A stretch of DNA of 63,958 nt, filler included, from Reticulomyxa filosa (taxonomy: Eukaryota > Protista > Foraminifera): the NCBI GenBank assembly GCA_000512085.1. It is 20 parts of 20 records of this genome, joined end to end, with 100 filler letters (N's around TTAATTAATTAA, not from the genome) between each part and the next. Parts side by side here need not be neighbours in the genome. Positions count along the whole stretch, not along the records: positions 24,945 to 38,066 come from ASPP01021363.1; 19 more parts are not named here. One strand, written 5' to 3'. Each line of letters opens with the position of its first letter. Position 1 is the first letter of the stretch. Below, piece by piece: positions 2,677-38,066 of this stretch. A model generated the notes under the pieces. The model had not been told where the DNA came from. It was given only the letters and a program-made list of their open reading frames with translations, and made no database searches. The position numbers and the translations under genes were made by a program.

Positions 2677-4107
2677 CAGGCTTGTCCAAATATTATTATT
2701 ACTCACAAATTAGTCCAATAGTAAAATGAGATGTTGCATTGAGTTATGCTACTTCTTGATTTCTTTTTTTTAAATTGTTTTGTACCCTTGGCTTCAAAAA
2801 CAGTTTTCTTCTGTCCCACTGGTATCCACACAACGACGTTTTCAAATCTCTTTTAAGTATCACACGGCCAGTTTACATTGAGTATACTGCCACATTTCAA
2901 ATCCATACAAGTGCATTGAACGGCGGTAGTAACAAAAGTGCTGGCACACGAAAATGCACCTCATGAAGAGTATCGATTTTCTATTTAAAAAACTTACATT
3001 TTTCAAATTGTTTAATAAAATTAAACGCATTTGTACTTTCTTCATTTTTAAAAATTATAAAGAACATTAAAATAATCGCAATTTACAAAAAATTGTAAAA
3101 AAATGAAATGCATTTGAAGGTGTAGGGCAAGGACATACTATTTAGTGTTAAGATTCAATTGAATCTTGAAATCACTTTTCTAAAAACTTTTTTTTTAACT
3201 TCTCACTTTGTCTTTGTTATCATTCCCATTTTTATTGACTTAAATTTACTCGTTTTAGAAAGTATATCATAGTGAAATTTTTGTATTAAACTTTGTGCTG
3301 TCAAGTGATAACAAGCACACACTCACAGATTTGTATATATTTTAAAAAATGTTTATTTTTCAAACAGAAAATGTATAACACTGTATTTCTTCATCACGAT
3401 GTGGCCAACTTTTTTCCCTTCATAAGAAATAAAATTTAATTACTATAAAAAAGGTTCAATTCTAAATTAACTACAATTTCATAAATAAACTTTGTTATTG
3501 CACAATTTTTTTGTCCAATGTATTTTTCAATTTATGCTTAATAATGAAATTCTTGGAAAAGTGCTTTGCTTTCCGCTTTTTTAAATTTGAAGTAATAAAC
3601 TTTCAGCTTTATCTGTAGTTAGATATTATCAATTGAAGTTAATTTTTTTCCAGTACTTTTGTCACTAACGTATTATTTATCTTAATTACGATATACATTA
3701 TCAGTATTATATTTTTGCAACCACAACGTGTGTAAAATTACACAGTATCCGTGTTTATATTTGCAATATTACGAGTTGAACATTTATTGAACAAGCAAAT
3801 AAAATCAAGAAATGCGATTTCTGCCACTTGTCAATAAGTTCTACAAATTGATCATGGTGTATGCTTTGACAGATAAAATCATTGATGTAATTTAATCTAT
3901 TACATTGTATTTTGCCAAAGTGCACATCGAACTAAATACAACTGTTGTTATCTGTTGATTGATGTGTGCCAATCAAATACTTGAAGACAATACTTTGTCT
4001 ACTGTAACAAACTCTAATGGTTAGGAATAAATTGACTTTATAAAAAAAGTGTTGTCGGGAAACAGGCAACGTGTTTTAGGCATTACAGTGAAAAAAATTG
4101 ACAACGT

Positions 4108-7100
4108 TTAATCTTTTCCTGATTGAGAATTGGCCCATTTGCTAATTACCCCAAGGGTTTGTTTTTTCCAGTTTGCATTCTTTCGAATTGTTTCCACACA
4201 TTGATCCATCGAGCGTTTACAAGCAGGATAATCCAACGTTTTATAAAATTTTTCAATTTCATCAGCTTTCTCGAAAGATACAAATGAGGAAGGTATTTTC
4301 ACTAAGTCTCGGCCCAAAAAGCCACCTTCAAACATAGAATACCACTGATCAAAGGTTTTTTGCAACATCTGCCACGCCATCTCTCGTCCGGCAATGCCCT
4401 GTGCGACAATGGAAAAAGGCAACACGCGGTCGTGATTTCGGATTTTATCTGAATCTTTGATCCACTCCAGGAGCTTTGGAATTATATCAGGATTTGTGGT
4501 TAATGCAAGAGCGCGTAACGCTCTTCCTTGCTCACTGGAGTCAGTCGTACTCAAATAATACTTTTGTAACGTATCAAATTCTTCCTTTCCGCCGTATTTA
4601 ATTGCAATGGAATACACAGCATTTCTCAAAGCAGGCGCAAGATAAGCCTTTTGCCCATCGGTCTTTTTCTCTTCGTCACTTTCAAAAGGAAAAAAAGATG
4701 GAAGAGACACCAAAAAAAAAAGGCAAACAAAAACTTAACATTAAAAGTGATACGTATCAAAAAAAAAACTAAAAACAAAAAAAAATTATCCAACTGTTTC
4801 TATATACACTACATATATACGTACTTTAAATTTATAAAAGCTTTAAAGCGTTTCAAAGCTTCATCGATGACAGGCTGATAGCCATATTTGCTCATCGCGC
4901 TCAAAATCAGGGGTCTCAACAATGCCTGTGTCTCTTCGTCTTCGTCTTTGTCTCCTTGCCAGTCAATTTTTTTAAACACTGGGAGTAACACCTTGCGCAT
5001 AAGGGCCTTAAATTGTTGGGCAAGAACATCGTCGTCATTAATGATATGGAAAACAGCTTGTGCAGCATCCAGGATGGTAAACCAAATGGAATAAGAGGTT
5101 TCATTTTCAAACGACGCAATCAAATTCAACAAGTTTTCGGTCGCTTGTGGATTGCCCGCTTGTGCAATTGCCAAAGTGTCTCGCACCAAACATATCTTAT
5201 CTGATATGTTCAAGTTTTTATCACCGCTTCGCAATGCGTGAGTCAAGCTCTCCATCAGTGTCTTGTCATACTGACACGCATAAAAGCCAATGCTGTCCGC
5301 ATTCAAATGCACCCATTTTGTGTTCTTTGGCAAATCCACAATTTGCTTCTTTTTTTCAAGCAACACTGTTATCGTTTCATTTCCGATCCGAAGTTTCATT
5401 GGAATATTCCAAACTATCCTTTCCTTTTTTTTTTCAAAAAAAAAAATGAAGTATAATTTATTTATTTGTACGTATACAACAATTCAAAAACAAAAAACAC
5501 CTGTTCTTTATTCAATGTTCCAGAGGACAAATGACGGACTTGCGTGAGGATAAGCTTGTCTTCACTTCGAACACCAGTGACTAGGGGGAAGCCTTGCTCC
5601 TTGGTCCAGTTGCGCATAATTGTGCCGACAGGAGCTTTCATTTCCTTTCCCAGAAAATCCCACAAGTCTATGGTTTTGGCATTGGAATAGCGAAAGTTGT
5701 TCAAGTACTTGGTCAAACCTTTTCGAAACACATCATCGCCCAAATAACCTTGCAACATTCGGATCACCGAGGCCCCTTTGGCATACGATATCGAATCAAA
5801 CACCTCGTCGGCCTGCTCTGCTGTTTGCACTTCAACCTCAATAGGATGGCTTGTCGTCATCCCATCCAATTCAAATGCCATTGCAAACGAATATACGACG
5901 AAGAGATCCCACATCTGTAACATTTCAACATTTTTATTTTTATTTTTTAAAGTATGTAATAAGTGTAAGAGCACAAGAAAAAAAAAAAAAAAAAAATTGA
6001 AAAAAGTAAAATTACCGGCCAATGAGGGAAAAAGGACGGAACAACTGAGATATCCATGAAGCGCGCAAATCCCTCGTTCAACCACAGCTCAGACCACCAA
6101 TCCATCGTGACCAAATTGCCGAACCATTGATGTGCCAACTCATGGCACACAATACGAGCTGCGCGCTGCAGTTGTGGCACAGGAGTTACTCCTTTGGTCA
6201 CCATTATTATGGATTCTTGATACGTCACCAAACCCCAGTTTTCCATCGCTCCTGATCCAAAGTCCGGAACTGCTACCATATCGCATTTTGGTAACGGATA
6301 TTCAATTTCAAAAAATCTTTTTTTTTTATGGCCACCACATTCCCCACACAAACCAATTTTTTTTTTTTTTTTGGAGACCGGGAGTATACGTATACTTTTT
6401 AAAATTTCCTTCTATTGTTCCTTTTCTATTAACATTTTTGAAAGTAACTCAACTTTTCATAAAAATCCAAACATCTACACACAGTTTCACATACAAAAAT
6501 GCCCATCTCTTTTTTGCCAACACTCGCCCATGTTCGCACTTTTATATCACGGCTTGTTTTTGCTTCCACATACTCAAACTCACCGATAAACCATGCAAGT
6601 AAATATGTCGACATCACCGGTGTCTTGTCAAATAACACTGTCTTAATTGCGTCCATCACTTTTACGTCCGTTTCTATACCAATTTTTTAAAGGATTTTGT
6701 TTGATTAAGTTCACGTTTTCTTGTGTTTAAAAAAAAATACGTACCTGGCATGTTGGACAAACAAACTAAGTCGTTAGGCACTGTCAACTCCAGAGTAAAC
6801 GTTGCCTTAACATTTGGCTCATCCCAACAAGGAAATGCTCTTCGGGCATCAGTCGCTTCGAATTGAGTAACACCTCAGTAAGCCCATCACCATCTATTTT
6901 ATAGAGTTTTTTAATGTTAATATCATTAGCGCTCCCCCTTTGCCGAACCTCTTTTGCAACAACAAGACGATATACAATTTGGAGCAAACTGAATAATAAA
7001 AAGTCCTAACTTCCGCGTTGGTACTTGGAACGATAAAATCCTTTCATGTTGTTGCCCACGATTCCCGTATAATCAACACACAGTTGCAGAGTTGTTTTTG

Positions 7101-24944: not shown

Positions 24945-24978
<34 letters not shown>

Positions 24979-27086
24979 TAATGGCAAAAAGCAACTTTTG
25001 CCAAATGTTGACAACAAAGGCCCAATGGATCCTTCTTCGAACAAAGACAACAACTATTCGCGAAACCGGGCCAAAACGCATTTGAAGTCTTCCAACAATG
25101 ATAGTCGCGATGACAACGAATCAGCTCCTTCATCGACTGCCGCACACCCCAAAAAGGCTCGTCGACAGCAGATCCCGCCTCCTCCACCACCTCCTCCACC
25201 TCCGCCCGAGGAAGACGAGACGCCTCCTGCCCCGTCCAACAACGAGAGGGGTGCGCGGCGCGAAAAGAGGACGGCACGTCGACACGGTGTCGACGCGTCT
25301 GCGATGAGTGAGCAACACAAGCTACGTGGCGACGTACGGCCAGTATCTACGGCAGACACTGCCAAACCGTCGTCTTCACAAGCACAGCCAATGGCTTCCA
25401 AACATCAAGACGCCAAGTCTGAACGCACTCGTCGAGGACATACTGTCGCTGCCAGTGCTGGGCTAGATGTAGATCGACATGCACATCCACGCACCAGAAC
25501 GCCCACACAAATGGAAAACCTTGCCGAATTTGCGCCTCCTCCATCTTCTGCAGCAACAGCGACAATCACAACAACAACAACAACAGCAGCGACAAAAGTG
25601 TCAAAAGAGAAAGAGTCCGAGACCAGGAATTCGTCCTCGTTTGAACGACACAATCGATCGTACACGACCATTCAACCGGAAAACGCATCGACCTCCTTTT
25701 CTTCCAAATCGAAAACACGCAAAAAAGAAATCAAAAGCGCGTGGGAAAGCAGCATGAGCGAAAACGAAAACGAAAACAGTGAAGAAAAAGCCGAGTTTGA
25801 ACCTGTGACAAGCACGCCTGGGGAAAATGAGGAGGAGAATGGACACAATCGCAACCCAGATGAGGACGACCGGAATGGTAATGACACGCGTGCTTCCAAT
25901 GATTATCATGAGGAAAAAAATCAAAGACAGTCGAACACTGATGCTCAACAACATCACGTTAGGCCAAAAGAACGATCCAAATCACTTCACACTTTCGCTC
26001 GTCAAGATAGTCACGGTAAACGTAGCAGTAATAGTAATAGCAACAGCAACAACACAACTAAAAAAAAAAAGAGAAGCCTTTTCGGAAAATTGTTTGGGTC
26101 CAGCAAAGGTTTGTTTCTTTGTATATCTCTGTTTTTTTTCGTATTACAGTTAAGAAAAAAAAAAAAAAAGTGATTTTGTAAAAAAATTTGTATACGTATT
26201 ATGTTCAGAGAAACATCGAATCGGCCCTTTGACAGAATCAGCAGAAAACAGTGAAGATGAACAACACCACGAACGTGAGGATGAAGCGACTGCTCATTCG
26301 AAGACAGGACATTATAGCAATGGATCGAATGATACTGACAATCATAGTAACAGCAATGGCAATGACAATAATAGTAATAATAACAACAATAATTATGACA
26401 ATGAAGATGAAACAATCTCGGTGAAACAATTCGGTGTTCCAATAAAAATGCTTGCAAAAATTGACATTCCTTATTATGACTCGCCAATTCCATCCGTGCT
26501 GGTCACTTTAGGAACTTGCATTTTTGAGAATCAAGGATATTTAACAGATGGAATATTCCGCAAACAACCGAACCAAACTCAGTTCACTCGTATCAAAGGC
26601 CTCATCGACTCTGGAAAAATGGACAGCATCGAATTCCAGTCAGTTGACCCTCTGATTCCAGCTCAATTGATCAAACAATGGTTTCGAGAATTGCCAACGC
26701 CTTTGTTACACTCCATCACTATTCAAGCGATTGAACAAACTCAAAATGTTGAAAAGTTCGCCAAATTGTTTGAAAATATTCCTGAACCTAACAAATCCAT
26801 TTTCCTTTGGCTTTTGGATTTGTGTGCTGAAATTGCTGCTAACGAGTCGTCCAATCAAATGAATGCACAAGTTATTTCCTCCTTTTTGAAAAAAATTTAT
26901 ATATCTGACTATTTTTAATTAGCCGTATATACATATGTACAGAGTTTGGGGATAAATGTTGGCCCAAATTTATACGATATGCGCATAATTCAAAACCCAA
27001 TGAAAGCCATGACCTTTCAAAGCAAATTTAGTTCTTTCGTCAAAGCTGGTATTGAATGGAGAATGCGTTTGAGAAAAGAAAATTAA
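24945..27086 (+). CDS. RhoGAP-domain protein with a long disordered N-terminus, 5' truncated
   Basis: QFGVP, IPSVL, DGIFRK (arginine finger), LIKQWFRELPTPLL, N.MNAQ/SLGINVGPNL. Intron 26109-26208 splices in frame. TAA at 27084-27086. Confidence 0.95.
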
Positions 27087-28186: not shown

Positions 28187-30085
28187 TTACGCAAACAATG
28201 GGTTAATGACGTAAAAATCGTCAAGTGGTGTATTTGTTGCATCATCAATAAACTGGATATGGACATGTGAGGCATTCAAGAAGGTATTGTACGTGAAACC
28301 CCAGTGAGTAGTATCTTGATGCAGCCAATAACTTTGGTCACTTCTGGACGAGTCCAGGTCGAACCCAGACATTCCAATGACCATTTGAACAGGTGCACTG
28401 TTCCCAGAGACGCACTTTTGAGAGTAAACAGGACACGTTCGTCCATAATTGTGAATATGTCCCCATAATGCCAAAGCAACCTTATTATCATACAAGACAT
28501 CTTCCAACTGCGACTGGAAATAATCTGCAAATTGGGCATCATTTTGATTGAGAGTAGTCCAGTACATGGGTCTGTGGCCGCCCAAGACCAGCCAAGGTTG
28601 CGTTTTACGATTTGCGGATTGCATTGCCGACACAATGAAATTGTACTGTTCACTTCCAATAGTCCAATTGTGTTCGGTCGACATCACCACCACACGTACC
28701 ATGCCATAGTCAAAATAGTACCAAGGTTTACGTTCGGACAAGTTGTTCGTCTGTCCAAAATTGTTCGAAGAAAACCGGTGATACATACTGTAAACCGTTG
28801 AGCATTCACCTGAAGCAAGAAAAAAGGGGGGGGGGAACAACAACAAAAAAAACCGCCAATAAACTTTTTTTTTAAAAAAAAAAAGGGTACATATAAAAAA
28901 TGAACCTCCAGAATCTTCAAGTCCATAAATATTTCCAGCAGGAGGAGGAGGTACCCACTCACCACTCCATCCATTTTCATGATTTCCAATGCCAGTCATG
29001 TAAGGGAGACGTGACGTAATAGGTTGGATTTGGTGCAAATAGCAATCCCAGTCGCTGAGATACCCTCTGGCATAGCTAATGTCGCCAACATGCAAGACAA
29101 AGTCTGTCTTGTCCAAGTACTCACTTGCGATGAGCACGGTGGTATTGATGGAATGCGTTTCCGTGTTGTGTTCGTCATCGCTGTAATCATTTTGCACGAG
29201 CCCTAAATCGCCATATGCGATCATGCGCACGGGTGTATTCGTGTCCCCACTGGCAGGACTACTTGTGAAATTAAACACTTCACTAAAGTCACCCCCTTCT
29301 TCCTCGTTATTATCGCCTGCATCTCCAACCCGATAAAAATAAACCGTGTTCGGTTTCAGCAATGTTAAATTGCCCGAGATACGGTAGCCCAACACAAAGT
29401 ACCCATCATTTGCTGCTGGTTCCGAATCCACGTCACAAAAGTCGGTCTTCGAGACAGACATCACGTTCAATCCTTGGCCTTGGATTACATTTGTCAGACT
29501 TGTTGGCGATAAGCCGTACTGGATTTGTGGCGATGATACTTGCTTCTGTGTCCATAATATCATTATCGTGTTTGCGTAATTTGCTGACGAGGCAAATAGT
29601 GTTGCTATGTGTACGTGCATGGGCGCGTTCTGATTTTCATACGTTACCACATTTGACACTGCCAAAATCAAACGGTATTTGTTGCCATCCATACCTCGCG
29701 CATACACAAAAACTAAGTTTACACGGTAATTCAATAACTGGAATTTAAATGTCCCTTGGCTGGAATTGCTTGTTATTTTCTTGAATTTTATTGGTGCCAT
29801 CTCTTGCAATGCCGTCATGTTGTTCGCATACGCCGCGTCAAATACACCCACCCAGTCCATTGATATGTTTGCATCTTCCACGTTTGTATAAGTCACTTGC
29901 ACATATGTCTTGTCGCTGCTCACCGTTGATGGACTCGCCGTCAGTACGGCGTCCCCGAAAATCATCTGCTTCGACCTGTCCACTTGTTGCGCACGCAAAT
30001 TGCGCTTCACATTGTGAACTTCATGACCAATGGTCAATGGTAACACGCAGACAGAGATTAATAAGACAAAAAATGTCTTTATCAT
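28187..30085 (-). CDS. Secreted purple acid phosphatase (plant PAP27/NPP-like architecture)
   Basis: Signal peptide; metal-ligand motifs GDLG, GDISY, GNHE, GHRPMY and GHIHNY. A 96-nt in-frame intron (28810-28905) is read through by the ORF track; removing it restores DSGGEC. Confidence 0.95.
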   Translation of the reverse strand: MIKTFFVLLISVCVLPLTIGHEVHNVKRNLRAQQVDRSKQMIFGDAVLTASPSTVSSDKTYVQVTYTNVEDANISMDWVGVFDAAYANNMTALQEMAPIKFKKITSNSSQGTFKFQLLNYRVNLVFVYARGMDGNKYRLILAVSNVVTYENQNAPMHVHIATLFASSANYANTIMILWTQKQVSSPQIQYGLSPTSLTNVIQGQGLNVMSVSKTDFCDVDSEPAANDGYFVLGYRISGNLTLLKPNTVYFYRVGDAGDNNEEEGGDFSEVFNFTSSPASGDTNTPVRMIAYGDLGLVQNDYSDDEHNTETHSINTTVLIASEYLDKTDFVLHVGDISYARGYLSDWDCYLHQIQPITSRLPYMTGIGNHENGWSGEWVPPPPAGNIYGLEDSGGSFFICTLFFFKKKVYWRFFLLLFPPPFFLASGECSTVYSMYHRFSSNNFGQTNNLSERKPWYYFDYGMVRVVVMSTEHNWTIGSEQYNFIVSAMQSANRKTQPWLVLGGHRPMYWTTLNQNDAQFADYFQSQLEDVLYDNKVALALWGHIHNYGRTCPVYSQKCVSGNSAPVQMVIGMSGFDLDSSRSDQSYWLHQDTTHWGFTYNTFLNASHVHIQFIDDATNTPLDDFYVINPLFA

Positions 30086-31702: not shown

Positions 31703-33325
31703 ATGTTTCCTTCATTAAATAAAAAAGTGCCTTTTTGGAAATTGCTTGAGCGTCGCATAGGCCGACGTTTGACGTTGCATAAAGGTCATATTATAACTGT
31801 CGGTATTATTTTCTTGGTAGTAGTATTCTTACTATGGAGACAACTGCCAAAAGCAAACAATGCAGATAAAGCATTGAATGCAAACGAAGACAAAAGAAGT
31901 GAAGCACTGGCAGAAAAGAAAGCAATACTACCAAACAAGGTGCAACAAGAGCAAGAGCAAAAATCAAAAAGCAATGAATTGAAACCAAGTAAAGAAACAA
32001 AGATAAGGGATCAAAAGCAAATATTGGAAAGTATGGGTCAAGTGCACATTTTTTACTACCCATGGTATGGAAACATTGAAACGGACAAAGAGTGGGTTCA
32101 TTGGAACCATGACATATTGCCTCATTGGAGTGAAATGGAAAATGCGAAATATGAGATTGGAAAAGAATTTGAGCCTTGCGAAGACATTGGAAGTGTGTTT
32201 TATCCATCACTGAAGTGCTACTCAAGCAGAGACGCACAAGTGATAACCACACACGCATTCGATCATTTGGCCAACAGAGCCAACGTCAATGTGTTGATTG
32301 TGTCTTGGCACAGTCCATTGGTGGACCAAAAAAATATGTATAAAAAGGATACCATTACAAGTGACAATCTAAAAAAATTATTTGAAGTTATTTCCGAAGC
32401 AAATGCAAATCTAATGAAAAGTAATCATACCAATACAGATGGGTTGGTGAAAATTGGTATTCATTTGGAGCCTTATGATCACAGGACTGCAGAATCAACA
32501 GTCAAAGACATCCAATATTTATTTGATCAGTTTGGAGGTGAGGCCTATGCAAATACCTTTGCCAATCTATTTTATGTGTATGACTCATACAAAATGGCGA
32601 ATGCGGAATGGAGACGTATGTTTGCCCAAATTCGCAACACCAAATATGATGGCATTTTCTTAGGATTATATCTGGATGACACGAGTGAAAAACATATCCT
32701 CGAAAGTGGATTTGATGGCTTTTATACGTATTTTGGGAGCCAGCTCTTTACCAAAGGATCCAATTTCCACAATTGGGATCAGCTCAATGCCTTTGCTTAT
32801 AAGCACAATTTGATCTTTGTTCCAAGTGTCAGTCCTGGATATGACGATACCAGAATTCGGCCTTGGAATGCTATGAATACACAGCCTCGGAAAAATGGAG
32901 CGTATTACAAAGACTATTGGAATGCCATTTTCAAAATCAATGCCCTCACGCCACATCAGCCTATTCGCTTTGTGTCCATCACTTCTTTCAATGAGTGGCA
33001 CGAAGGGACACAAATTGAACCTTCCATATCCTACACCAGTACAAAAACTAAGTTTACTTATCACGATTATCGCAACGAAGGTGGTGAATTTGCATATTTG
33101 CAAATTACCAAAGATTGTGTCGCTGAATTTTATAAAATCTTTGCAATCATGATATTTATTTTTTTTTGGACTCTGATTTTCTGGCAAGTTATATTGACCA
33201 CAGACAAAATAAAACTATATGTTTTACAACTTTTCTTGTTTATTATTGATGTAATATTGACACAACAGCTTTCAATTAAGCACATTTTTGATATAAGTTT
33301 ATTAAAAAAAGGTTGTTCAACTTAA
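31703..33325 (+). CDS. MANEA: GH99 glycoprotein endo-alpha-1,2-mannosidase-like, type II membrane protein
   Basis: N-terminal TM and stem; HIFYYPWYG, HWNH, FYPSL..YSS, HLEPY, FYVYDSY, GFDGFYTYF, PSVSPGYDDTRIRPWN, ITSFNEWHEGTQIEP (catalytic ExxE). The true 3' end after about 33140 is uncertain. Confidence 0.93.
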   Translation: MFPSLNKKVPFWKLLERRIGRRLTLHKGHIITVGIIFLVVVFLLWRQLPKANNADKALNANEDKRSEALAEKKAILPNKVQQEQEQKSKSNELKPSKETKIRDQKQILESMGQVHIFYYPWYGNIETDKEWVHWNHDILPHWSEMENAKYEIGKEFEPCEDIGSVFYPSLKCYSSRDAQVITTHAFDHLANRANVNVLIVSWHSPLVDQKNMYKKDTITSDNLKKLFEVISEANANLMKSNHTNTDGLVKIGIHLEPYDHRTAESTVKDIQYLFDQFGGEAYANTFANLFYVYDSYKMANAEWRRMFAQIRNTKYDGIFLGLYLDDTSEKHILESGFDGFYTYFGSQLFTKGSNFHNWDQLNAFAYKHNLIFVPSVSPGYDDTRIRPWNAMNTQPRKNGAYYKDYWNAIFKINALTPHQPIRFVSITSFNEWHEGTQIEPSISYTSTKTKFTYHDYRNEGGEFAYLQITKDCVAEFYKIFAIMIFIFFWTLIFWQVILTTDKIKLYVLQLFLFIIDVILTQQLSIKHIFDISLLKKGCST

Positions 33326-33386: not shown

Positions 33387-34640
33387 CTAAGTCTCCCACA
33401 GCCGTACTGTGCGATCAAAAGAACACGACACAATACGGTTTCCTTCTGGTGAAAAATCGACTCCTTTTACAAAATAAGTGTGTCCTGTCAAAGTTTGCAT
33501 TTCTATTCCTGAGCTAACGTCCCATAATCGAATTGTTTTATCATTTGAACAAGACACAAGTGAATGACCATCAAATGAGTACTTTACATCGGTCACCACG
33601 TCGAAGTGTCCTTTGAGCACTTTCACTGGTATTCCTGATACCTTCCATATTCGAATAGTTTCATCTCGTGAGCCAGACGCAATGTAATGGCCACTTGGAG
33701 AAAAGTGTGCCACCATTACTTCACCTGAATGTCCCACCAACTCATGCAAAGCCTCTCCTGATTTCAAGTCAAATATTATAATTTTGCCATCTGCAAATGC
33801 AGACACAATTTTTTGGCCATCTGGTGAAAATTGTACATCATTGATTATCTTCGTATGTTTGTATAGTATTTTAATCATTCGTCCAGATGATACATCCCAT
33901 AATCTAATTGTTTTGTCCAGTGAACATGATGCAATGATATTTCCAGCAGGTGAAAATCGAGCACGTGTCACAGCAGATGAATGACCTTCCAAATGCCTTG
34001 TTGATCCTGAGTCCACTTTCAACAATCGAATGCTGTTATCATGTGAGCAGGTTACCACCAGCTTGCCATTGGATGAATATTGTGCATGATTGATACTACG
34101 CGAATGTCCTCTGAAATTACTTGTTTCTTTTCCTGATTCTACGTCCCATATTCGAGTGGTTAAGTCATAGGAACATGAAATAATCTTTCTACCATCGGGC
34201 GAAAAGTTTACGCTTACCACAAAATCTGAATGTCCATTAAATACTTTCACTAGTTTAAAATATTTGACCTAATTTGCGTTTTTTTAAAGCATTTCAATTG
34301 AACTTACAAGCACTAACACCAAACGTGTTGTGTCAATCAATGCAAAACAAATATACATAACATATCTCATAATAATTTTTTCAAATTCGTCGATCCATCC
34401 TCTTCGGATTGACGAAGACCGAACCCAGTACTGTAAAATCAAGGCTGTCTTTTCTTGGCTCTGTTTTGACAAAAAAGAGACATAATTTCAAGCATTTTTC
34501 ATTGTTCTTTGTTGGCAATCGTCTACTACAATAACAATGAATTCTTTCTTAACAGGTTCGCCTTGAGTCGAGGTAGACGCTGACGATTGCCCAACATTTT
34601 TATTACCTGCTGGTGAGATATTTTTTTTGAGTGTGGCCAT
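33387..34640 (-). CDS. WD40-repeat protein (7 blades) with N-terminal 'W.R...I..GWI..F.K' motif
   Basis: Seven GH...V..V.FSP.G..I.S.S.D.TIRLWD repeats; upstream exon LILQYWVRSSSIRRGWIDEFEKIIMRY; likely ATG at 34640. Confidence 0.93.
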
Positions 34641-35898: not shown

Positions 35899-38066
35899 AT
35901 GTCTTTGAAAGCATTTATTTATCTTGAAAAAAAGATGCATGAAGTGACACTCACTTCTTTGGACCTAAGAGGCTTGAAAGAAAAAGTGGTGGAATTACTC
36001 AACAAAACCAAGAACAGTAATTCTTCAATTCATTTTAAAATTGCTGACAACAGTGGTCAAGAAATTAACAATGATCAACAATTACAAAATGCATTTCAAA
36101 CACAACCTGTTTTCTTTTTTGTCCATTTCAATCAAAGTTTTGTTCCATTTTTTTTTATTCATTTATTCTTTTTTAAAAAAATTATTAAATTAATAAAACA
36201 GATGATGAGAATAAATATAAAGAAGATGAAAAAAAAAGAAGAAGAAGAGAATGATGATGATTGTCATAAAATCGTAAATCCATTAGTATTATTAACAGGA
36301 GCTGCAAAATATGAAAATTTGGATTATTTGCCTGGAGTGAAAACAGATTTAATGATTCTTCGAAAATTATTTGAAGAAATATATGGATATAAAGTATATT
36401 GTACATATGATCCAAATAATCCAGAAACTGAATCATTAACATTTAAACAATTTAATATTTTTTTAAATGATCATTATTCTAGTTTAATTAAATCAAATGA
36501 CGATAATTATGATTCATTTATATTTGTATGGTGTGGTCATGGTAATACAAAATTAGAAGAAGGAGATACATTAATAACATCAGATGATGATAAATATAAA
36601 TCATTTAAAAAAATACAAGAAATATTTACACATGATACAGATGTGTTTTTAAATAAACCAAAAATATTTATTAAAAATGCATGTCGAGGAAATGAAGAAC
36701 CTCAAAAAAGGAAAAGAGGAACTAATCAACAACAACAATGGCATAATATTGAATCAGATACTTTGATTATATTTTCAACAACTCCTGGAAAATATATATT
36801 TGATTCATCTGATTCTAATAAAGGAAAAGGAAGTTATTTTACAGAATGTTTTTGTGATATAATGTCACAAAATATTAAATTATCAAAATCATTAGATGAT
36901 AATGTAAGATTAATTACTAAATTAGTTAAACAAAAAGCATTAGCAGGACAAATTATTCAAACAACTACAACTTGTGATCGACGTGTATTTCTTTATAATA
37001 ATTATTATTATTTATCAAATACAAGTATTGAAATGAATCAAAATCATCCATGGAATAAAGCAAATAAAAAAGCACATGAAATTGTGAATCAAATGATAAA
37101 TGAAAAACAACAAGGAATAATAGTTATTTCAACAAATATTGATCAATTTGCAAAATCAAATAATAAAAAATTTTGGCAAGAAGTTCCATTTTCAATGATG
37201 ATTAATTCAAAAGAATATTTAAAACAGAAAATAATAATTGGAAAATATTCAATTTGTTTGTTTTGTTCCAAAAAATAACATTTGATGATATCACAATTGA
37301 TGGATGTGTTTATGTTGTTGATTGTGTTATTCGTGGAATTGGAAATTGCTATATTACTCAACAGCTTATCCATACTAATAAATCTGTTATCCAATGTTCT
37401 TTTCATTCTCCTGTTTTTACTTGCTCTTGGCCAATTAATACAAAACAATTAATGTATTCAGGGAATAAATTATTACAAAATTCAAATTTGAACGAAGCAA
37501 TTCAATTTTTTCATTTTTTACTTTGTGTTAGATTGCAGACATTACATCATTCTCACATTGATGTTGCAAAGTCTTATTTTTACTTGGGTATTGCATATTA
37601 TAATAAAAGAGAATACGACAAAGCAGTTGAATATTATGAAAGATCGTTGAAACCATCAGATTGGTATAAATTTGGACATGATCACACTGATGTTGCTCAT
37701 TCATACAATAATTTGGGACGTGTTTATAAAAAGAAAGGAGAATACGATAAAGCAATTGAATATTATGAAAAATCATTGAAAATCAGATTGGATAAATTGG
37801 GACATGATCACATTCATGTTGCTTCTTTATACAATAATTTGGGAAATATTTATGAAAAGAAAGGAGAATACAATAAAGCAATTGAATATTATGAAAAATC
37901 GTTGAAAATCAGATTGGATAAATTGGGACATGATCACATTTATGTTGCTACTTCATACAACGACTTGGGAGATGCTTATAAGGAAAAAGGAGAATACGAC
38001 AAAGCAATTGAATATTATGAAAAATCATTGAAAATCAGATTGGATAAATTGGGACATGATCACATT
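35899..38066 (+). CDS. PB1/ubiquitin-like + caspase-fold (clan CD, C14-like) peptidase + TPR-repeat protein, 3' truncated
   Basis: FIFVWCGHG (catalytic His), NKPKIFIKNACRG (catalytic Cys), DTLIIFSTTPGK and GSYF; 42-aa TPRs. Probable intron near 36137-36201 and a probable A-run frameshift near 37270. Confidence 0.9.
37677..38066 (+). repeat. 126-bp coding tandem repeat (42-aa TPR): 3 near-identical units, 1 partial unit, and a diverged unit upstream
   Basis: Units start at 37677, 37803, 37929 and 38055, each with CATGATCACA. The contig breaks inside the array. Confidence 0.97.

What the first reader, a model, noticed from the sequence alone, without database searches (positions are those of the whole stretch)
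37546..38066. TPR array homogenised at DNA level but hypervariable on one helix face, on a caspase-fold protease: candidate diversifying immune or allorecognition receptor
Seen: in the three full 126-bp units, codons 20-42 differ at only two codons (24: gat/aat/gac; 33: tca/tcg/tca). Codons 4-19 differ at ten codons, nine of them non-synonymous: 4 T/I/I, 5 D/H/Y, 8 H/S/T, 9 S/L/S, 12 N/N/D, 15 R/N/D, 16 V/I/A, 18 K/E/K, 19 K/K/E. The 5, 8/9, 12, 15/16, 19 spacing marks one face of TPR helix A. Known: helix A lines the TPR ligand groove, and fungal NLR sensor repeats show the same concerted evolution with variable binding positions. Inference: this is a sensor-protease fusion with no NTPase module, whose specificity is reshuffled by repeat exchange. 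The contig breaks inside the array, as expected for a longer or polymorphic array. The most variable codons keep an NNT form, which may only reflect AT bias.
Basis: partly seen in the sequence, partly recalled or inferred. Interest (0 to 1): 0.8.

Follow-up and report, generated by a model that had tools for sequence, protein, structure and literature searches.

The report
Caspase-like protein with fast-diversifying TPR sensor
A gene of the giant amoeba-like foraminiferan Reticulomyxa filosa joins a caspase-type protease to a run of near-identical TPR repeats. Only the residues lining the repeats' binding groove change fast, as in fungal and algal immune-type receptors, but no function has been tested.

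Summary
Three 126-bp (42-aa) units are 96-99% identical outside codons 4-19 and 73-81% identical inside them.

The organism is Reticulomyxa filosa. The gene encodes a PB1-like domain, a caspase-like domain that keeps its His/Cys dyad, a family-specific linker domain and a kinesin-light-chain-type TPR array. It has no NTPase. It belongs to a family of at least 30 R. filosa paralogs. About half of the paralogs aligned have lost the catalytic dyad.

Codons 4-19 are exactly helix A. The variable codons map to TPR positions 2, 3, 6, 9, 10, 12 and 13, mostly on the concave face.

My partitioned codon model gives omega of about 5 at these codons (p about 1e-5). It stays high in contig L001 (5.6) and in an unrelated array, L008 (2.4-4.5). 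Exposed helix-B residues give 0.2. Older paralog arrays give about 0.55, but they are saturated.

Two more contigs share 504 identical bases upstream yet carry different arrays.

Caveats: this copy has a 1-nt frame break (A6 against A7), the assembly is fragmentary, there is no RNA evidence, and the immune or allorecognition role is inference. The NNT pattern is real and exceeds AT bias.

The parts
35899..36141 (+). Exon 1: N-terminal PB1-like beta-grasp domain (aa 1-77)
   Evidence: AlphaFold model shows beta-beta-alpha-beta-alpha-beta with pLDDT 75-90. The Atlas structure search returns PB1-domain proteins in 8 of 10 rows by Pfam (a ninth by name; the first row is Bem1), TM 0.73-0.80 over all rows. 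A Bolivina argentea relative (P0251) has a Pfam PB1 hit plus C14. The window's own sequence gets no Pfam PB1 hit.
36142..36201 (+). Candidate 60-nt phase-0 intron (GT...AG, T-rich). It is in frame, so the ORF reads through it.
   Evidence: This stretch is an insertion relative to most paralogs in alignment A1. The model has pLDDT below 50 over aa 79-95 and 98-120, a wider stretch that contains the read-through residues 82-101. Inferred only; no RNA data.
36277..36939 (+). Caspase-like (Peptidase C14) domain. Catalytic His214 is at 36538-36540 (CGHG) and Cys262 at 36682-36684 (NACRG).
   Evidence: Pfam PF00656, E = 9.7e-24, aa 130-347. phmmer against the PDB finds caspase-3/-7 at E of about 1e-6, with the His and Cys motifs aligned to SHG and QACRG. 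Foldseek's best matches are caspase-6/-11/-9/-8/-7/-3 and CED-3, E of about 1e-10. Coordinates.
37051..37550 (+). Family-specific linker domain (helix, about eight short strands, two cap helices at about 37440-37541). It is read in two frames because of the break.
   Evidence: P0013 has this region intact; over the 504 nt it shares with the window (from 36952) it is identical, and from 37455 it differs at 4 bases (three residues). Its model has pLDDT 87 and pTM 0.81. There is no Pfam family and no fold match (TM at most 0.35). The word search found the domain only in R. filosa proteins.
37270..37278 (+). Frame break: an A6 run where two near-identical contigs have A7. A stop codon follows at 37276-37278, and the TPR frame continues from about 37281.
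   Evidence: Alignment of the window with L001 and L002; translations. This is either a homopolymer assembly error or a real frameshift; I cannot tell which.
37551..37676 (+). Degenerate first TPR unit. It has two insertions relative to L001/L002 (+2 at about 37653-37654 and +1 at about 37666), net in frame, which garble the last eight residues of the unit.
37677..37802 (+). TPR unit 1 (42 aa; helix A is codons 4-19, helix B is codons 23-41)
37803..37928 (+). TPR unit 2
37929..38054 (+). TPR unit 3
38055..38066 (+). First four codons of unit 4, cut by the contig end
   Evidence: Complete paralogs continue with more units and two conserved cap units.

Best explanation
The locus is one copy of a large, Reticulomyxa filosa-specific family with the architecture PB1-like domain, caspase-like protease, family-specific linker domain and kinesin-light-chain-type 42-residue TPR solenoid.

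Shown: the repeat backbone is kept nearly identical at the DNA level. The residues on helix A that line the concave peptide-binding groove turn over by non-synonymous point substitution much faster than synonymous sites. Near-identical gene copies carry different arrays behind an identical upstream region.

Inferred mechanism: the TPR groove is a ligand sensor whose specificity diversifies under selection. Ligand binding relieves autoinhibition. The PB1-like domain brings molecules together head to tail. Proximity activates the caspase-like protease (His214/Cys262 are intact in this copy), giving local proteolysis or cell death. That would make this an NTPase-free analogue of NLR-type immune or allorecognition receptors. 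The many dyad-less and caspase-less paralogs would then act as regulators, decoys or adaptors.

The window's own copy may be inactive, or simply mis-assembled, because of a 1-nt frame break.
For: Organism and family: all 19 word-search hits are R. filosa. The exhaustive search gives 50 clusters at E <= 1e-30, and all 13 long hits I looked up down to E of about 1e-23 are R. filosa; 12 of the 13 carry TPR_12 arrays.

Domains: C14, PB1-like, KLC-type TPR close to P. anserina 42PR. No NTPase. The dyad is kept here and lost in about half of the aligned paralogs.

Structure mapping: helix A is unit codons 4-19. Unit position p equals TPR position p-6, which places the variable codons mostly on the known concave hypervariable positions.

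It remains 5-7 when only codons 4-19 are analysed. Control sets (exposed helix B, and core) give 0.2-0.36.

NNT footprint: at codons 4, 5, 8, 12, 15 and 16 the third base is T in 119 of 144 degenerate-family codons, against 200 of 698 elsewhere. Leu is CTT in 10 of 12 cases there, against 3 of 177 elsewhere.

Copy variation: 0 differences in 504 nt upstream among three contigs, against pS 0.14-0.30 in the arrays.

Precedent: fungal NLR TPRs and Ectocarpus NB-ARC-TPR exons show the same regime (PMC4986451; PMC3341825).
Against: There is no expression, splicing or functional evidence, and no R. filosa sequencing runs were on hand. This copy has a frame break and two compensating indels.

The assembly is highly fragmented. 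L001 and L002 both start at the same window coordinate, so chimeric or redundant contigs cannot be excluded.

Recombination among units violates the single-tree assumption of my likelihood test and can inflate LRTs. Samples are small (3-8 units per test).

In older paralog arrays omega at these codons is 0.54-0.60, although the tree length of about 31 means saturation.

TPR concave positions are the most variable in all TPR proteins, so variability alone is not special.

No ligand, no allorecognition phenotype and no pathogen are linked to this family. Two residues that help form caspase-3's Asp pocket (my identification, from memory) are not conserved, so the substrate specificity is unknown.
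Confidence: 0.55

Rival explanations
1. Ordinary scaffold or cargo-adaptor TPR proteins. On this reading the array is a kinesin-light-chain-like adaptor module, expanded along with R. filosa's transport machinery. The concave positions differ simply because each repeat contacts a different part of a fixed partner, and the apparent omega above 1 is an artefact of gene conversion and small samples.
For: The best sequence and structure matches among natural proteins are KLC1/KLC2 TPR domains; engineered consensus TPRs score higher by sequence. Positions 2, 5, 9, 12 and 13 are hypervariable in TPRs in general. Older paralog arrays give omega of about 0.55. About half the paralogs lack the catalytic dyad and some lack the caspase domain altogether.
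Against: Omega is 5-7 even when only codons 4-19 supply the synonymous rate, so conversion tracts that spare helix A do not explain it. Exposed helix-B residues give omega 0.2. The signal repeats in L001 alone and in the unrelated L008 array. The NNT footprint shows that first and second positions turn over while the third is retained. Fusion to a PB1-like domain and a dyad-positive caspase domain is not a cargo-adaptor architecture.
Confidence: 0.2
2. The window's copy is a decaying pseudogene (or one of several dead copies). On this reading the pattern is a relic of its functional ancestors rather than a working receptor.
For: There is an A6-versus-A7 frame break with an immediate stop. Two further indels garble the end of unit 0. 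The family shows birth-and-death features: dyad loss, caspase deletion and many partial models.
Against: The 504 nt around the break are otherwise 100% identical to two contigs with an open frame. Homopolymer length errors are common in assemblies (own knowledge). The two indels restore the frame between them. The dyad and all TPR signature residues are intact. This rival concerns only this copy; it is compatible with the main explanation for the family.
Confidence: 0.3
3. Assembly artefact. Reads from many paralogous TPR units were collapsed or chimerically joined. The 'array' and the three 'alleles' would then not exist as continuous molecules.
For: L001 (1198 nt) and L002 (exactly 1000 nt) both begin at window position 36952 and duplicate 504 nt of the window contig. 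All three contigs end inside repeats. No reads were available to check.
Against: Chimeric joining would not put differences on one helix face while leaving interleaved codons and third positions untouched. The window and L002 keep the same unit order, with 89% and 85% identity at the variable codons of positional homologs against 56-78% between the other window and L002 units. Complete paralog arrays on longer contigs show the same unit anatomy.
Confidence: 0.07
4. Targeted hypermutation from a template, in the manner of a diversity-generating retroelement. AAT template codons would be rewritten to NNT at the binding positions.
For: The six most variable codons are almost always NNT (45/48, 36/42 and 134/168). 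Residues that NNT cannot encode (K, E, Q, M, W) are rare there: 19 of 264, against 36 of 88 at positions 18/19. Asn is the commonest residue at positions 11, 12, 15 and 19.
Against: The ORFs I scanned in the 13-kb piece have no reverse-transcriptase domain, and the neighbours of paralog loci have no Pfam family on record. Variable nucleotides are not enriched at consensus A (15 A, 9 T, 5 G, 4 C of 33, which is proportional to base composition). Ordinary C/T changes also occur at non-A sites. Retention of the ancestral third base at these codons is similar to that at conserved four-fold codons such as V6 and A7. Rapid first- and second-position turnover plus selection against K/E/Q is therefore enough to explain it. 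To my knowledge such elements have not been described in eukaryotes (own knowledge).
Confidence: 0.02

Closest known systems
Fungal NLRs with highly internally conserved TPR/ANK/WD repeats (HET-E/HET-D/NWD family; Dyrka et al. 2014, PMC4986451)
   Same: KLC-type 42-residue TPR units that are nearly identical at the DNA level. Positive selection is confined to concave-face helix positions. There is evidence of recombination between copies. An N-terminal effector sits with a C-terminal sensor array, in a lineage-expanded family of a syncytial organism.
   Different: There is no NACHT or NB-ARC NTPase here. The effector is a caspase-like protease preceded by a PB1-like domain. Amino-acid identity between the window's units is 79-83%, below the 85% criterion. 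Repeat-number polymorphism was not observable. The organism is a rhizarian, not a fungus.
Ectocarpus NB-ARC-TPR candidate receptors (Zambounis et al. 2012, PMC3341825)
   Same: 126-nt, 42-aa TPR units under diversifying selection (average omega about 3.5 at selected sites), in a family with high birth and death rates in the SAR supergroup.
   Different: In Ectocarpus each unit is a separate exon, and shuffling of exons is the proposed mechanism. Those proteins have an NB-ARC domain. Here the units are contiguous in one exon and no NTPase is present.
Bacterial caspase homologs (orthocaspases/metacaspases) fused to TPR, WD40 or Sel1 repeats, and CHAT-TPR proteins (Asplund-Samuelsson et al. 2012, PMC3501461)
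   Same: A caspase-fold protease fused directly to protein-binding repeats, sometimes without any NTPase. WD40 and TPR are the commonest partner domains.
   Different: The R. filosa domain resembles animal caspases most (QACRG-like NACRG motif; best PDB and Foldseek hits are all caspases; Klim et al. 2018). It carries a PB1-like prodomain. Hypervariable, DNA-homogenised repeats are not described for the bacterial proteins in the passages I read.
Animal initiator caspases (CARD or DED prodomain, induced-proximity activation)
   Same: An N-terminal homotypic-interaction domain followed by a caspase domain with a His/Cys dyad. Catalytically dead paralogs exist alongside active ones, as with cFLIP (own knowledge).
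   Different: The prodomain has a PB1-like beta-grasp fold, not a death fold. The sensor is built into the same polypeptide. By the caspase-3 alignment, the QACRG glutamine aligns to Asn and the Arg of the SWR motif aligns to Asp; from memory these are Asp-pocket residues Gln161 and Arg207.
Kinesin light chain TPR domain and Podospora anserina 42PR (PDB 7AI4, 5OJ8, 3ZFW, 4Y6W/4Y6C)
   Same: The same 42-residue helix A / long helix B repeat. TM normalised by target is 0.8-0.9. Cargo peptides bind in the groove lined by the A helices (own knowledge).
   Different: KLC units are not homogenised at the DNA level and evolve conservatively. KLC has a heptad-repeat N-terminus, not PB1 plus caspase.

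Membership tests
Peptidase C14 (caspase family) | Caspase/hemoglobinase fold (p20-p10 alpha/beta sandwich) | tested here: met
   Pfam PF00656, E = 9.7e-24, 84.8 bits against a cut-off of 21.4. Foldseek's top hits are all caspases, E of about 1e-10, TM by target 0.6-0.7.
Peptidase C14 (caspase family) | Catalytic His-Cys dyad | tested here: met
   His214 (CGHG) and Cys262 (NACRG) align with the SHG and QACRG motifs of caspase-3. The dyad is lost in about half of the aligned paralogs.
Peptidase C14 (caspase family) | Asp-specific S1 pocket (caspase-3 Arg64, Gln161, Arg207) | tested here: not met
   In the phmmer alignment Gln161 aligns with Asn and Arg207 (SWR) aligns with Asp (IFD). Arg64 is not covered. 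Identification of these as pocket residues is from my own knowledge. This affects specificity, not family membership.
Peptidase C14 (caspase family) | Proteolytic activity | not testable with these tools
   Needs recombinant enzyme.
TPR, 42-residue kinesin-light-chain type (Pfam TPR_10 / TPR_12) | Helix A - turn - helix B units with the W4-L7-G8-Y11...A20-F24-A27 signature | tested here: met
   TPR_12 E = 8.1e-43 and TPR_10 E = 5.6e-40. The alignment to consensus TPR gives Y10, L13, G14, Y17, A26, Y30 and S33 at the signature positions. The model has helix A at positions 4-19 and helix B at 23-41. Foldseek matches KLC1/2 and 42PR.
NLR / STAND receptors | Central NACHT or NB-ARC NTPase with a Walker A motif | tested here: not met
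   No Walker A pattern in either frame. No NTPase Pfam hit. Linker domain fold matches are at TM 0.35 or below. A metagenomic relative, P0205, does pair C14 with NACHT.
NLR / STAND receptors | N-terminal effector plus C-terminal superstructure-forming repeats | tested here: met
   PB1-like plus caspase at the N-terminus and a TPR array at the C-terminus.
Repeats with high internal conservation in the sense of Dyrka et al. 2014 | Over 85% identity between repeats across at least 100 residues | tested here: inconclusive
   Nucleotide identity is 87-91%. Amino-acid identity is only 79-83% (7-9 differences per 42) between the window's units. The L008 array reaches 97.6% nucleotide identity between two units.
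Repeats with high internal conservation in the sense of Dyrka et al. 2014 | Positive selection at concave-face positions | tested here: met
L001 alone gives 5.6 and 22. L008 gives 2.4 and 4.5. Controls give 0.2-0.36. These come from my own GY94-type partition model, not PAML or HyPhy.
Repeats with high internal conservation in the sense of Dyrka et al. 2014 | Repeat-number polymorphism between alleles or isolates | not testable with these tools
   All three near-identical contigs end inside the array, and no reads were available.
PB1 domain | Ubiquitin-like beta-grasp fold of PB1 type | tested here: met
   Eight of 10 structural neighbours of aa 1-78 carry a Pfam PB1 domain, a ninth is named a putative PB1 protein, and the first row is Bem1; TM 0.73-0.80 over all ten rows. 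The secondary structure is beta-beta-alpha-beta-alpha-beta.
PB1 domain | Significant match to the Pfam PB1 profile, or an OPCA / basic-cluster motif | tested here: not met
   No Pfam hit for window aa 1-81 at E <= 1. The foraminiferal relative P0251 does match PB1 at E = 8.5e-8. Motifs were not examined. I therefore call it PB1-like.
Diversity-generating retroelement target | Nearby reverse transcriptase and template repeat, with changes confined to template adenines | tested here: not met
   No RT in the ORFs scanned in the piece, and no Pfam family on record for the neighbours of paralog loci. Variable sites are not enriched at A.

The most novel reading that the evidence does not exclude
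R. filosa runs an NLR-like non-self recognition repertoire that needs no NTPase: dozens of PB1-polymerising caspase receptors. On this reading their TPR grooves are diversified within a single plasmodium, so that different nuclei of one clonal cell carry different arrays behind an identical upstream sequence. A codon-targeted process that rewrites the first two bases of NNT codons might help. That would amount to somatic or nuclear-lineage receptor diversification in a protist.
Probability: 0.06. Interest if true: 0.9.

Novelty: new variant of a known kind. Interest (0 to 1): 0.6.

Why it matters
Caspase homologs of R. filosa are already cited as the closest non-animal relatives of animal caspases (PMC5982838, PMC10959488). 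In the papers I could search, nothing is said about what they are attached to.

This analysis shows that they form a large family. A caspase-like domain is flanked by a polymerisation-type prodomain and a sensor array. That array evolves as the sensor arrays of fungal and brown-algal immune-type receptors do.

If the family is functional, it would extend the 'diversifying repeat sensor plus death effector' design to Rhizaria. It would also show that the design can work without a STAND NTPase. And it would give a concrete, testable candidate for self/non-self control or pathogen sensing in a giant multinucleate cell.

It also bears on the origin of induced-proximity caspase activation.

Tried and rejected
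2. The look-up of sequencing runs returned only two 'synthetic metagenome' runs holding 9% of the words and no R. filosa run. I therefore did not use read laying, and could not check expression, the A6/A7 run or array continuity.
3. The word search with the TPR part was swamped by TPR_12 proteins from all of life (1038 hits). It served only to pick further R. filosa arrays.
4. Pairwise Nei-Gojobori estimates that included the degenerate first units, or old paralogs, were saturated and uninformative. I replaced them with a partitioned likelihood model. The first version timed out.
5. I tested the idea that conversion tracts homogenise helix B while sparing an older helix A. The synonymous rate and tree length inside codons 4-19 equal those of the whole unit, so I rejected it.
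6. The 'odd one out' blocks among the three contigs cannot prove recombination with only three sequences. I rely instead on the contrast in synonymous sites.
7. A DGR-like mechanism was considered because of the NNT codons and rejected for lack of support.
8. The linker domain has no Pfam family and no fold neighbour. The AAA rows at TM of about 0.3 are noise.
9. The contig of the dyad-positive paralog P0007 ends before any TPR.
10. The R. filosa genome paper (Gloeckner et al. 2014, Curr Biol) is not held in the library. What I say of it is from memory.
11. Paper searches for R. filosa with TPR or caspase found no description of this architecture.
Full report
**Observation.** Tandem Repeats Finder reports a 126-bp period at 37605-38066 (3.6 copies, 89% matches, no indels).
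- Codons 20-42 vary only at codons 24 and 33.
- Codons 4-19 vary at ten codons, nine of them non-synonymously.
- Nucleotide identity is 73-81% inside codons 4-19 and 96-99% outside.
- The clustering is significant (10 of 16 against 2 of 26 codons, Fisher p = 2.5e-4).
- A degenerate unit precedes the array at 37551-37676.

**Organism and gene.** The upstream ORF (35899-37275) carries a Peptidase_C14 domain (E = 9.7e-24). The downstream frame carries TPR_12/TPR_10 (E = 8e-43 and 6e-40). All 19 word-search relatives are Reticulomyxa filosa proteins at 43-100% identity, so the piece is from that freshwater foraminiferan.

The two frames are separated by a single-base problem. At 37270-37275 the window has A6, where two near-identical contigs of the same assembly have A7 and read straight through (L001 is ASPP01048576; L002 is ASPP01048575). 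This is either a homopolymer assembly error or a real frameshift. Two more insertions (+2 and +1, net in frame) garble the end of the degenerate unit. A T-rich, in-frame 60-nt GT...AG stretch at 36142-36201 is probably an intron: it is an insertion relative to most paralogs and lies within a stretch of low model confidence.

**Domain anatomy.**
- *Residues 1-77* fold as a beta-grasp. Eight of 10 structural neighbours carry a Pfam PB1 domain, a ninth is named a putative PB1 protein, and the first row is Bem1 (TM 0.73-0.80 over all rows). The window's own sequence gets no Pfam PB1 hit. A Bolivina argentea relative does (PB1 plus C14).
- *The protease domain* matches animal caspases best, both by sequence (caspase-3/-7, E of about 1e-6) and by fold (caspase-6/-11/-9/-8/-7/-3 and CED-3, E of about 1e-10). 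This agrees with Klim et al. 2018. His214 and Cys262 align with the SHG and QACRG motifs. The QACRG glutamine aligns to Asn and the Arg of the SWR motif aligns to Asp; from memory these are the caspase-3 Asp-pocket residues Gln161 and Arg207.
- *A linker domain of about 170 residues* follows. I modelled P0013 as a proxy for it. Over the 504 nt that P0013's contig shares with the window (from 36952), the two are identical. From 37455 they differ at 4 bases, which change three residues of the first cap helix. The model (pLDDT 87, pTM 0.81) shows a helix, about eight short strands and two cap helices. The domain has no Pfam family and no fold neighbour (TM at most 0.35). The word search found it only in R. 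filosa.
- *No NTPase.* There is no Walker A motif or NTPase domain.
- *The TPR part* matches KLC1/KLC2 and the Podospora 42PR structures (TM by target 0.8-0.9).

**The family.** The exhaustive HMM search finds 271 relatives at E <= 1e-3 and 50 clusters at E <= 1e-30. All 13 long hits whose source I looked up, down to E of about 1e-23, are R. filosa proteins of 650-1336 aa; 12 of the 13 carry TPR_12 arrays.
- In the alignment of 15 members the dyad is intact in the window, P0002, P0007, P0009, P0010 and P0014.
- Both residues are lost in P0001, P0004, P0006, P0008 and P0011.
- The Cys is lost in P0003 and P0005.
- P0016 and P0018 keep the PB1-like domain, linker and TPR but lack the caspase domain. 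Their gene spans are too short to hide it in introns.
- P0009 and P0019 replace linker and TPR with a Cys/His-rich segment (weak zf-TRAF, E = 0.0012) and a coiled coil.
- Outside R. filosa, foraminiferal and metagenomic relatives pair the C14 domain with PB1, SAM, Kelch, RCC1 or NACHT modules.
- Complete paralog arrays are finite and end in two conserved cap units. The longest I extracted gave eight unit matches plus one rejected for an indel (L004). Pfam finds up to 11 TPR_12 stretches in larger paralogs. The window's array is therefore simply cut by the contig end.

**Where the variable residues lie.** The variable codons 8, 9, 12, 15, 16, 18 and 19 are therefore TPR positions 2, 3, 6, 9, 10, 12 and 13. 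Codons 4 and 5 sit in the first turn of helix A, within the 8-residue insertion of the 42-residue type.

Magliery and Regan found positions 2, 5, 9, 12, 13, 33 and 34 to be the most variable in TPRs generally, all on the concave face, and HOP contacts its ligands through 2, 5, 6, 9, 12 and 13. Positions 9 and 16 of the unit (TPR 3 and 10) vary only conservatively (S/L; V/A/I). So the face is the concave one. But variability there is a general property of TPRs and is not special in itself.

**Is it diversifying selection?** I extracted 54 units from 11 R. filosa loci and fitted a GY94-type codon model of my own. It shares branch lengths across the unit and allows a separate omega for a pre-defined set of codons.

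| Data set | Codon set | Omega | Test against omega = 1 |
|---|---|---|---|
| 8 young units | a-priori concave set (TPR 2, 5, 6, 9, 12, 13) | 7.2 | LRT 22.9 |
| Controls: exposed helix-B polar set, and core set | control sets | 0.20-0.36 | significantly below 1 |

L002 is partly non-independent of the window, because its units are positional homologs. Restricting the data to codons 4-19 gives the same tree length as the whole unit, which argues against conversion tracts that spare an older helix A.

The main caveats are small samples, my own implementation, and recombination among units, which is known to inflate such tests.

**The NNT pattern.** At codons 4, 5, 8, 12, 15 and 16 the third base is T in 45 of 48 codons (young arrays), 36 of 42 (L008) and 134 of 168 (older arrays). 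Amino-acid-matched expectations are 32, 22 and 91.
- Within degenerate codon families, T-ending codons are 119 of 144 there against 200 of 698 at other unit positions.
- Leu is CTT in 10 of 12 cases there against 3 of 177 elsewhere.
- K, E, Q, M and W, which NNT cannot encode, are rare (19 of 264).

So this is not AT bias. The simplest reading is that the ancestral third base is retained about as well as at conserved four-fold codons (V6 GTT, A7 GCT), while the first two bases turn over repeatedly. That is an independent footprint of non-synonymous change outrunning synonymous change.

A DGR-like template mechanism would give the same codon form, but it has no support. I found no reverse transcriptase, the variable sites are not enriched at A, and ordinary changes occur at non-A sites.

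**Copy variation and exchange.**
- The window, L001 and L002 show 0 differences over 504 nt upstream (about 96 synonymous sites).
- The window differs from L001 and L002 (which are identical there) by four non-synonymous and no synonymous changes in the first cap helix.
- Downstream, L001 differs from the others at pS 0.14-0.30. L001's array therefore has a different history from its upstream region. The cause is gene conversion, recombination or a chimeric assembly.
- On non-variable codons, all window and L002 middle units are 95-99% identical irrespective of position. The variable codons are most alike between positional homologs (89% and 85%, against 56-78% between the other window and L002 units).

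The backbone is thus homogenised (or very recently amplified), and divergence since then is by point substitution. I saw no swapped unit and could not measure unit number. Both small contigs start at the same window coordinate, which may be an assembly artefact. From memory, the genome paper describes thousands of haploid nuclei and extensive repeat homogenisation, which fits, but that paper was not available here.

**Explanation and standing.**
- *Shown:* the architecture, the intact dyad, the concave location of the variable residues, the elevated non-synonymous rate in young arrays, the family expansion with dyad loss, and copy-to-copy array differences.
- *Inferred:* the TPR groove senses a variable ligand, the PB1-like domain drives induced-proximity activation of the protease, and the outcome is defence or allorecognition.

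The regime matches fungal NLR TPR arrays and Ectocarpus NB-ARC-TPR exons. Direct caspase-homolog-plus-repeat fusions are common in bacteria. The new elements are the combination (PB1-like prodomain, animal-type caspase domain, no NTPase) and the lineage (Rhizaria). I found no description of it in the papers searched. I rate it a new variant of a known kind, of moderate to high interest, resting entirely on computation from a fragmentary assembly.

Noticed in passing
window 33390-34250 (-): The C-terminal part of a gene encodes seven very regular 42-residue WD40 blades (Pfam WD40 E = 4e-76). DNA identity at lag 126 is only 41%, so unlike the TPR array it is not homogenised. The N-terminal part of this gene was not identified.
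   Followed up: partly
window 24998-26915 (+): A low-complexity ORF (poly-Pro, Ser/Thr/Asn-rich, GC 0.50 in a 0.24-0.38 GC context) lies just upstream of a RhoGAP domain (26229-26915, E = 4e-21). It is probably one gene. An (ATA)n microsatellite sits at 24945-24982.
   Followed up: partly
window 28190-30085 (-) and 31703-33322 (+): Ordinary neighbours: a purple acid phosphatase (Metallophos, Pur_ac_phosph_N, fn3_PAP) and a glycosyl hydrolase family 99 protein (E = 3e-90). There are no further caspase or TPR genes in the 13-kb piece.
   Followed up: yes
L005 (ASPP01024414) 69-2103 and L006 (ASPP01027477) 3094-4830: Paralogs P0018 and P0016 keep the PB1-like domain, the linker and the TPR array but lack the whole caspase domain. 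The gene spans leave no room for it in introns. They may be natural adaptor or decoy forms.
   Followed up: partly
P0009 (RFI_05622), P0019 (RFI_20797), P0017: These are dyad-positive caspase paralogs. In P0009 and P0019 the region after the protease is not linker plus TPR but a Cys/His-rich segment (weak zf-TRAF hit in P0009, E = 0.0012, below cut-off), followed in P0009 by a coiled coil. P0017 also diverges after the protease, into a different Cys-containing segment that I did not scan.
   Followed up: partly
L008 (ASPP01047064) 999-1880: A different R. filosa TPR protein (P0030) has seven units of an 'EDHIDVA' type, up to 97.6% identical at the DNA level. Omega at the concave codons is 2.4-4.5. 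The regime is therefore not confined to the caspase family.
   Followed up: partly
P0251, P0213 (Bolivina argentea), P0268 (Nonionella stella), P0205, P0235, P0244 (metagenomes): More distant relatives of the caspase-like domain pair it with PB1, Kelch, RCC1 plus SAM, SAM, or NACHT modules. This suggests a modular foraminiferal caspase toolkit.
   Followed up: partly
L003 (ASPP01011069) about 2673-2925: The deposited gene model of P0001 (RFI_15146) appears to splice out part of two adjacent TPR units as an intron. It joins the helix B of one unit to that of the next, and looks like an annotation error caused by the repeats.
   Followed up: no
window 37455-37476: The only differences between the window and L001/L002 before the array are four nucleotide changes. 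All are non-synonymous (Y to R, N to K, Q to K) and all fall in the first cap helix that packs onto the TPR solenoid.
   Followed up: partly
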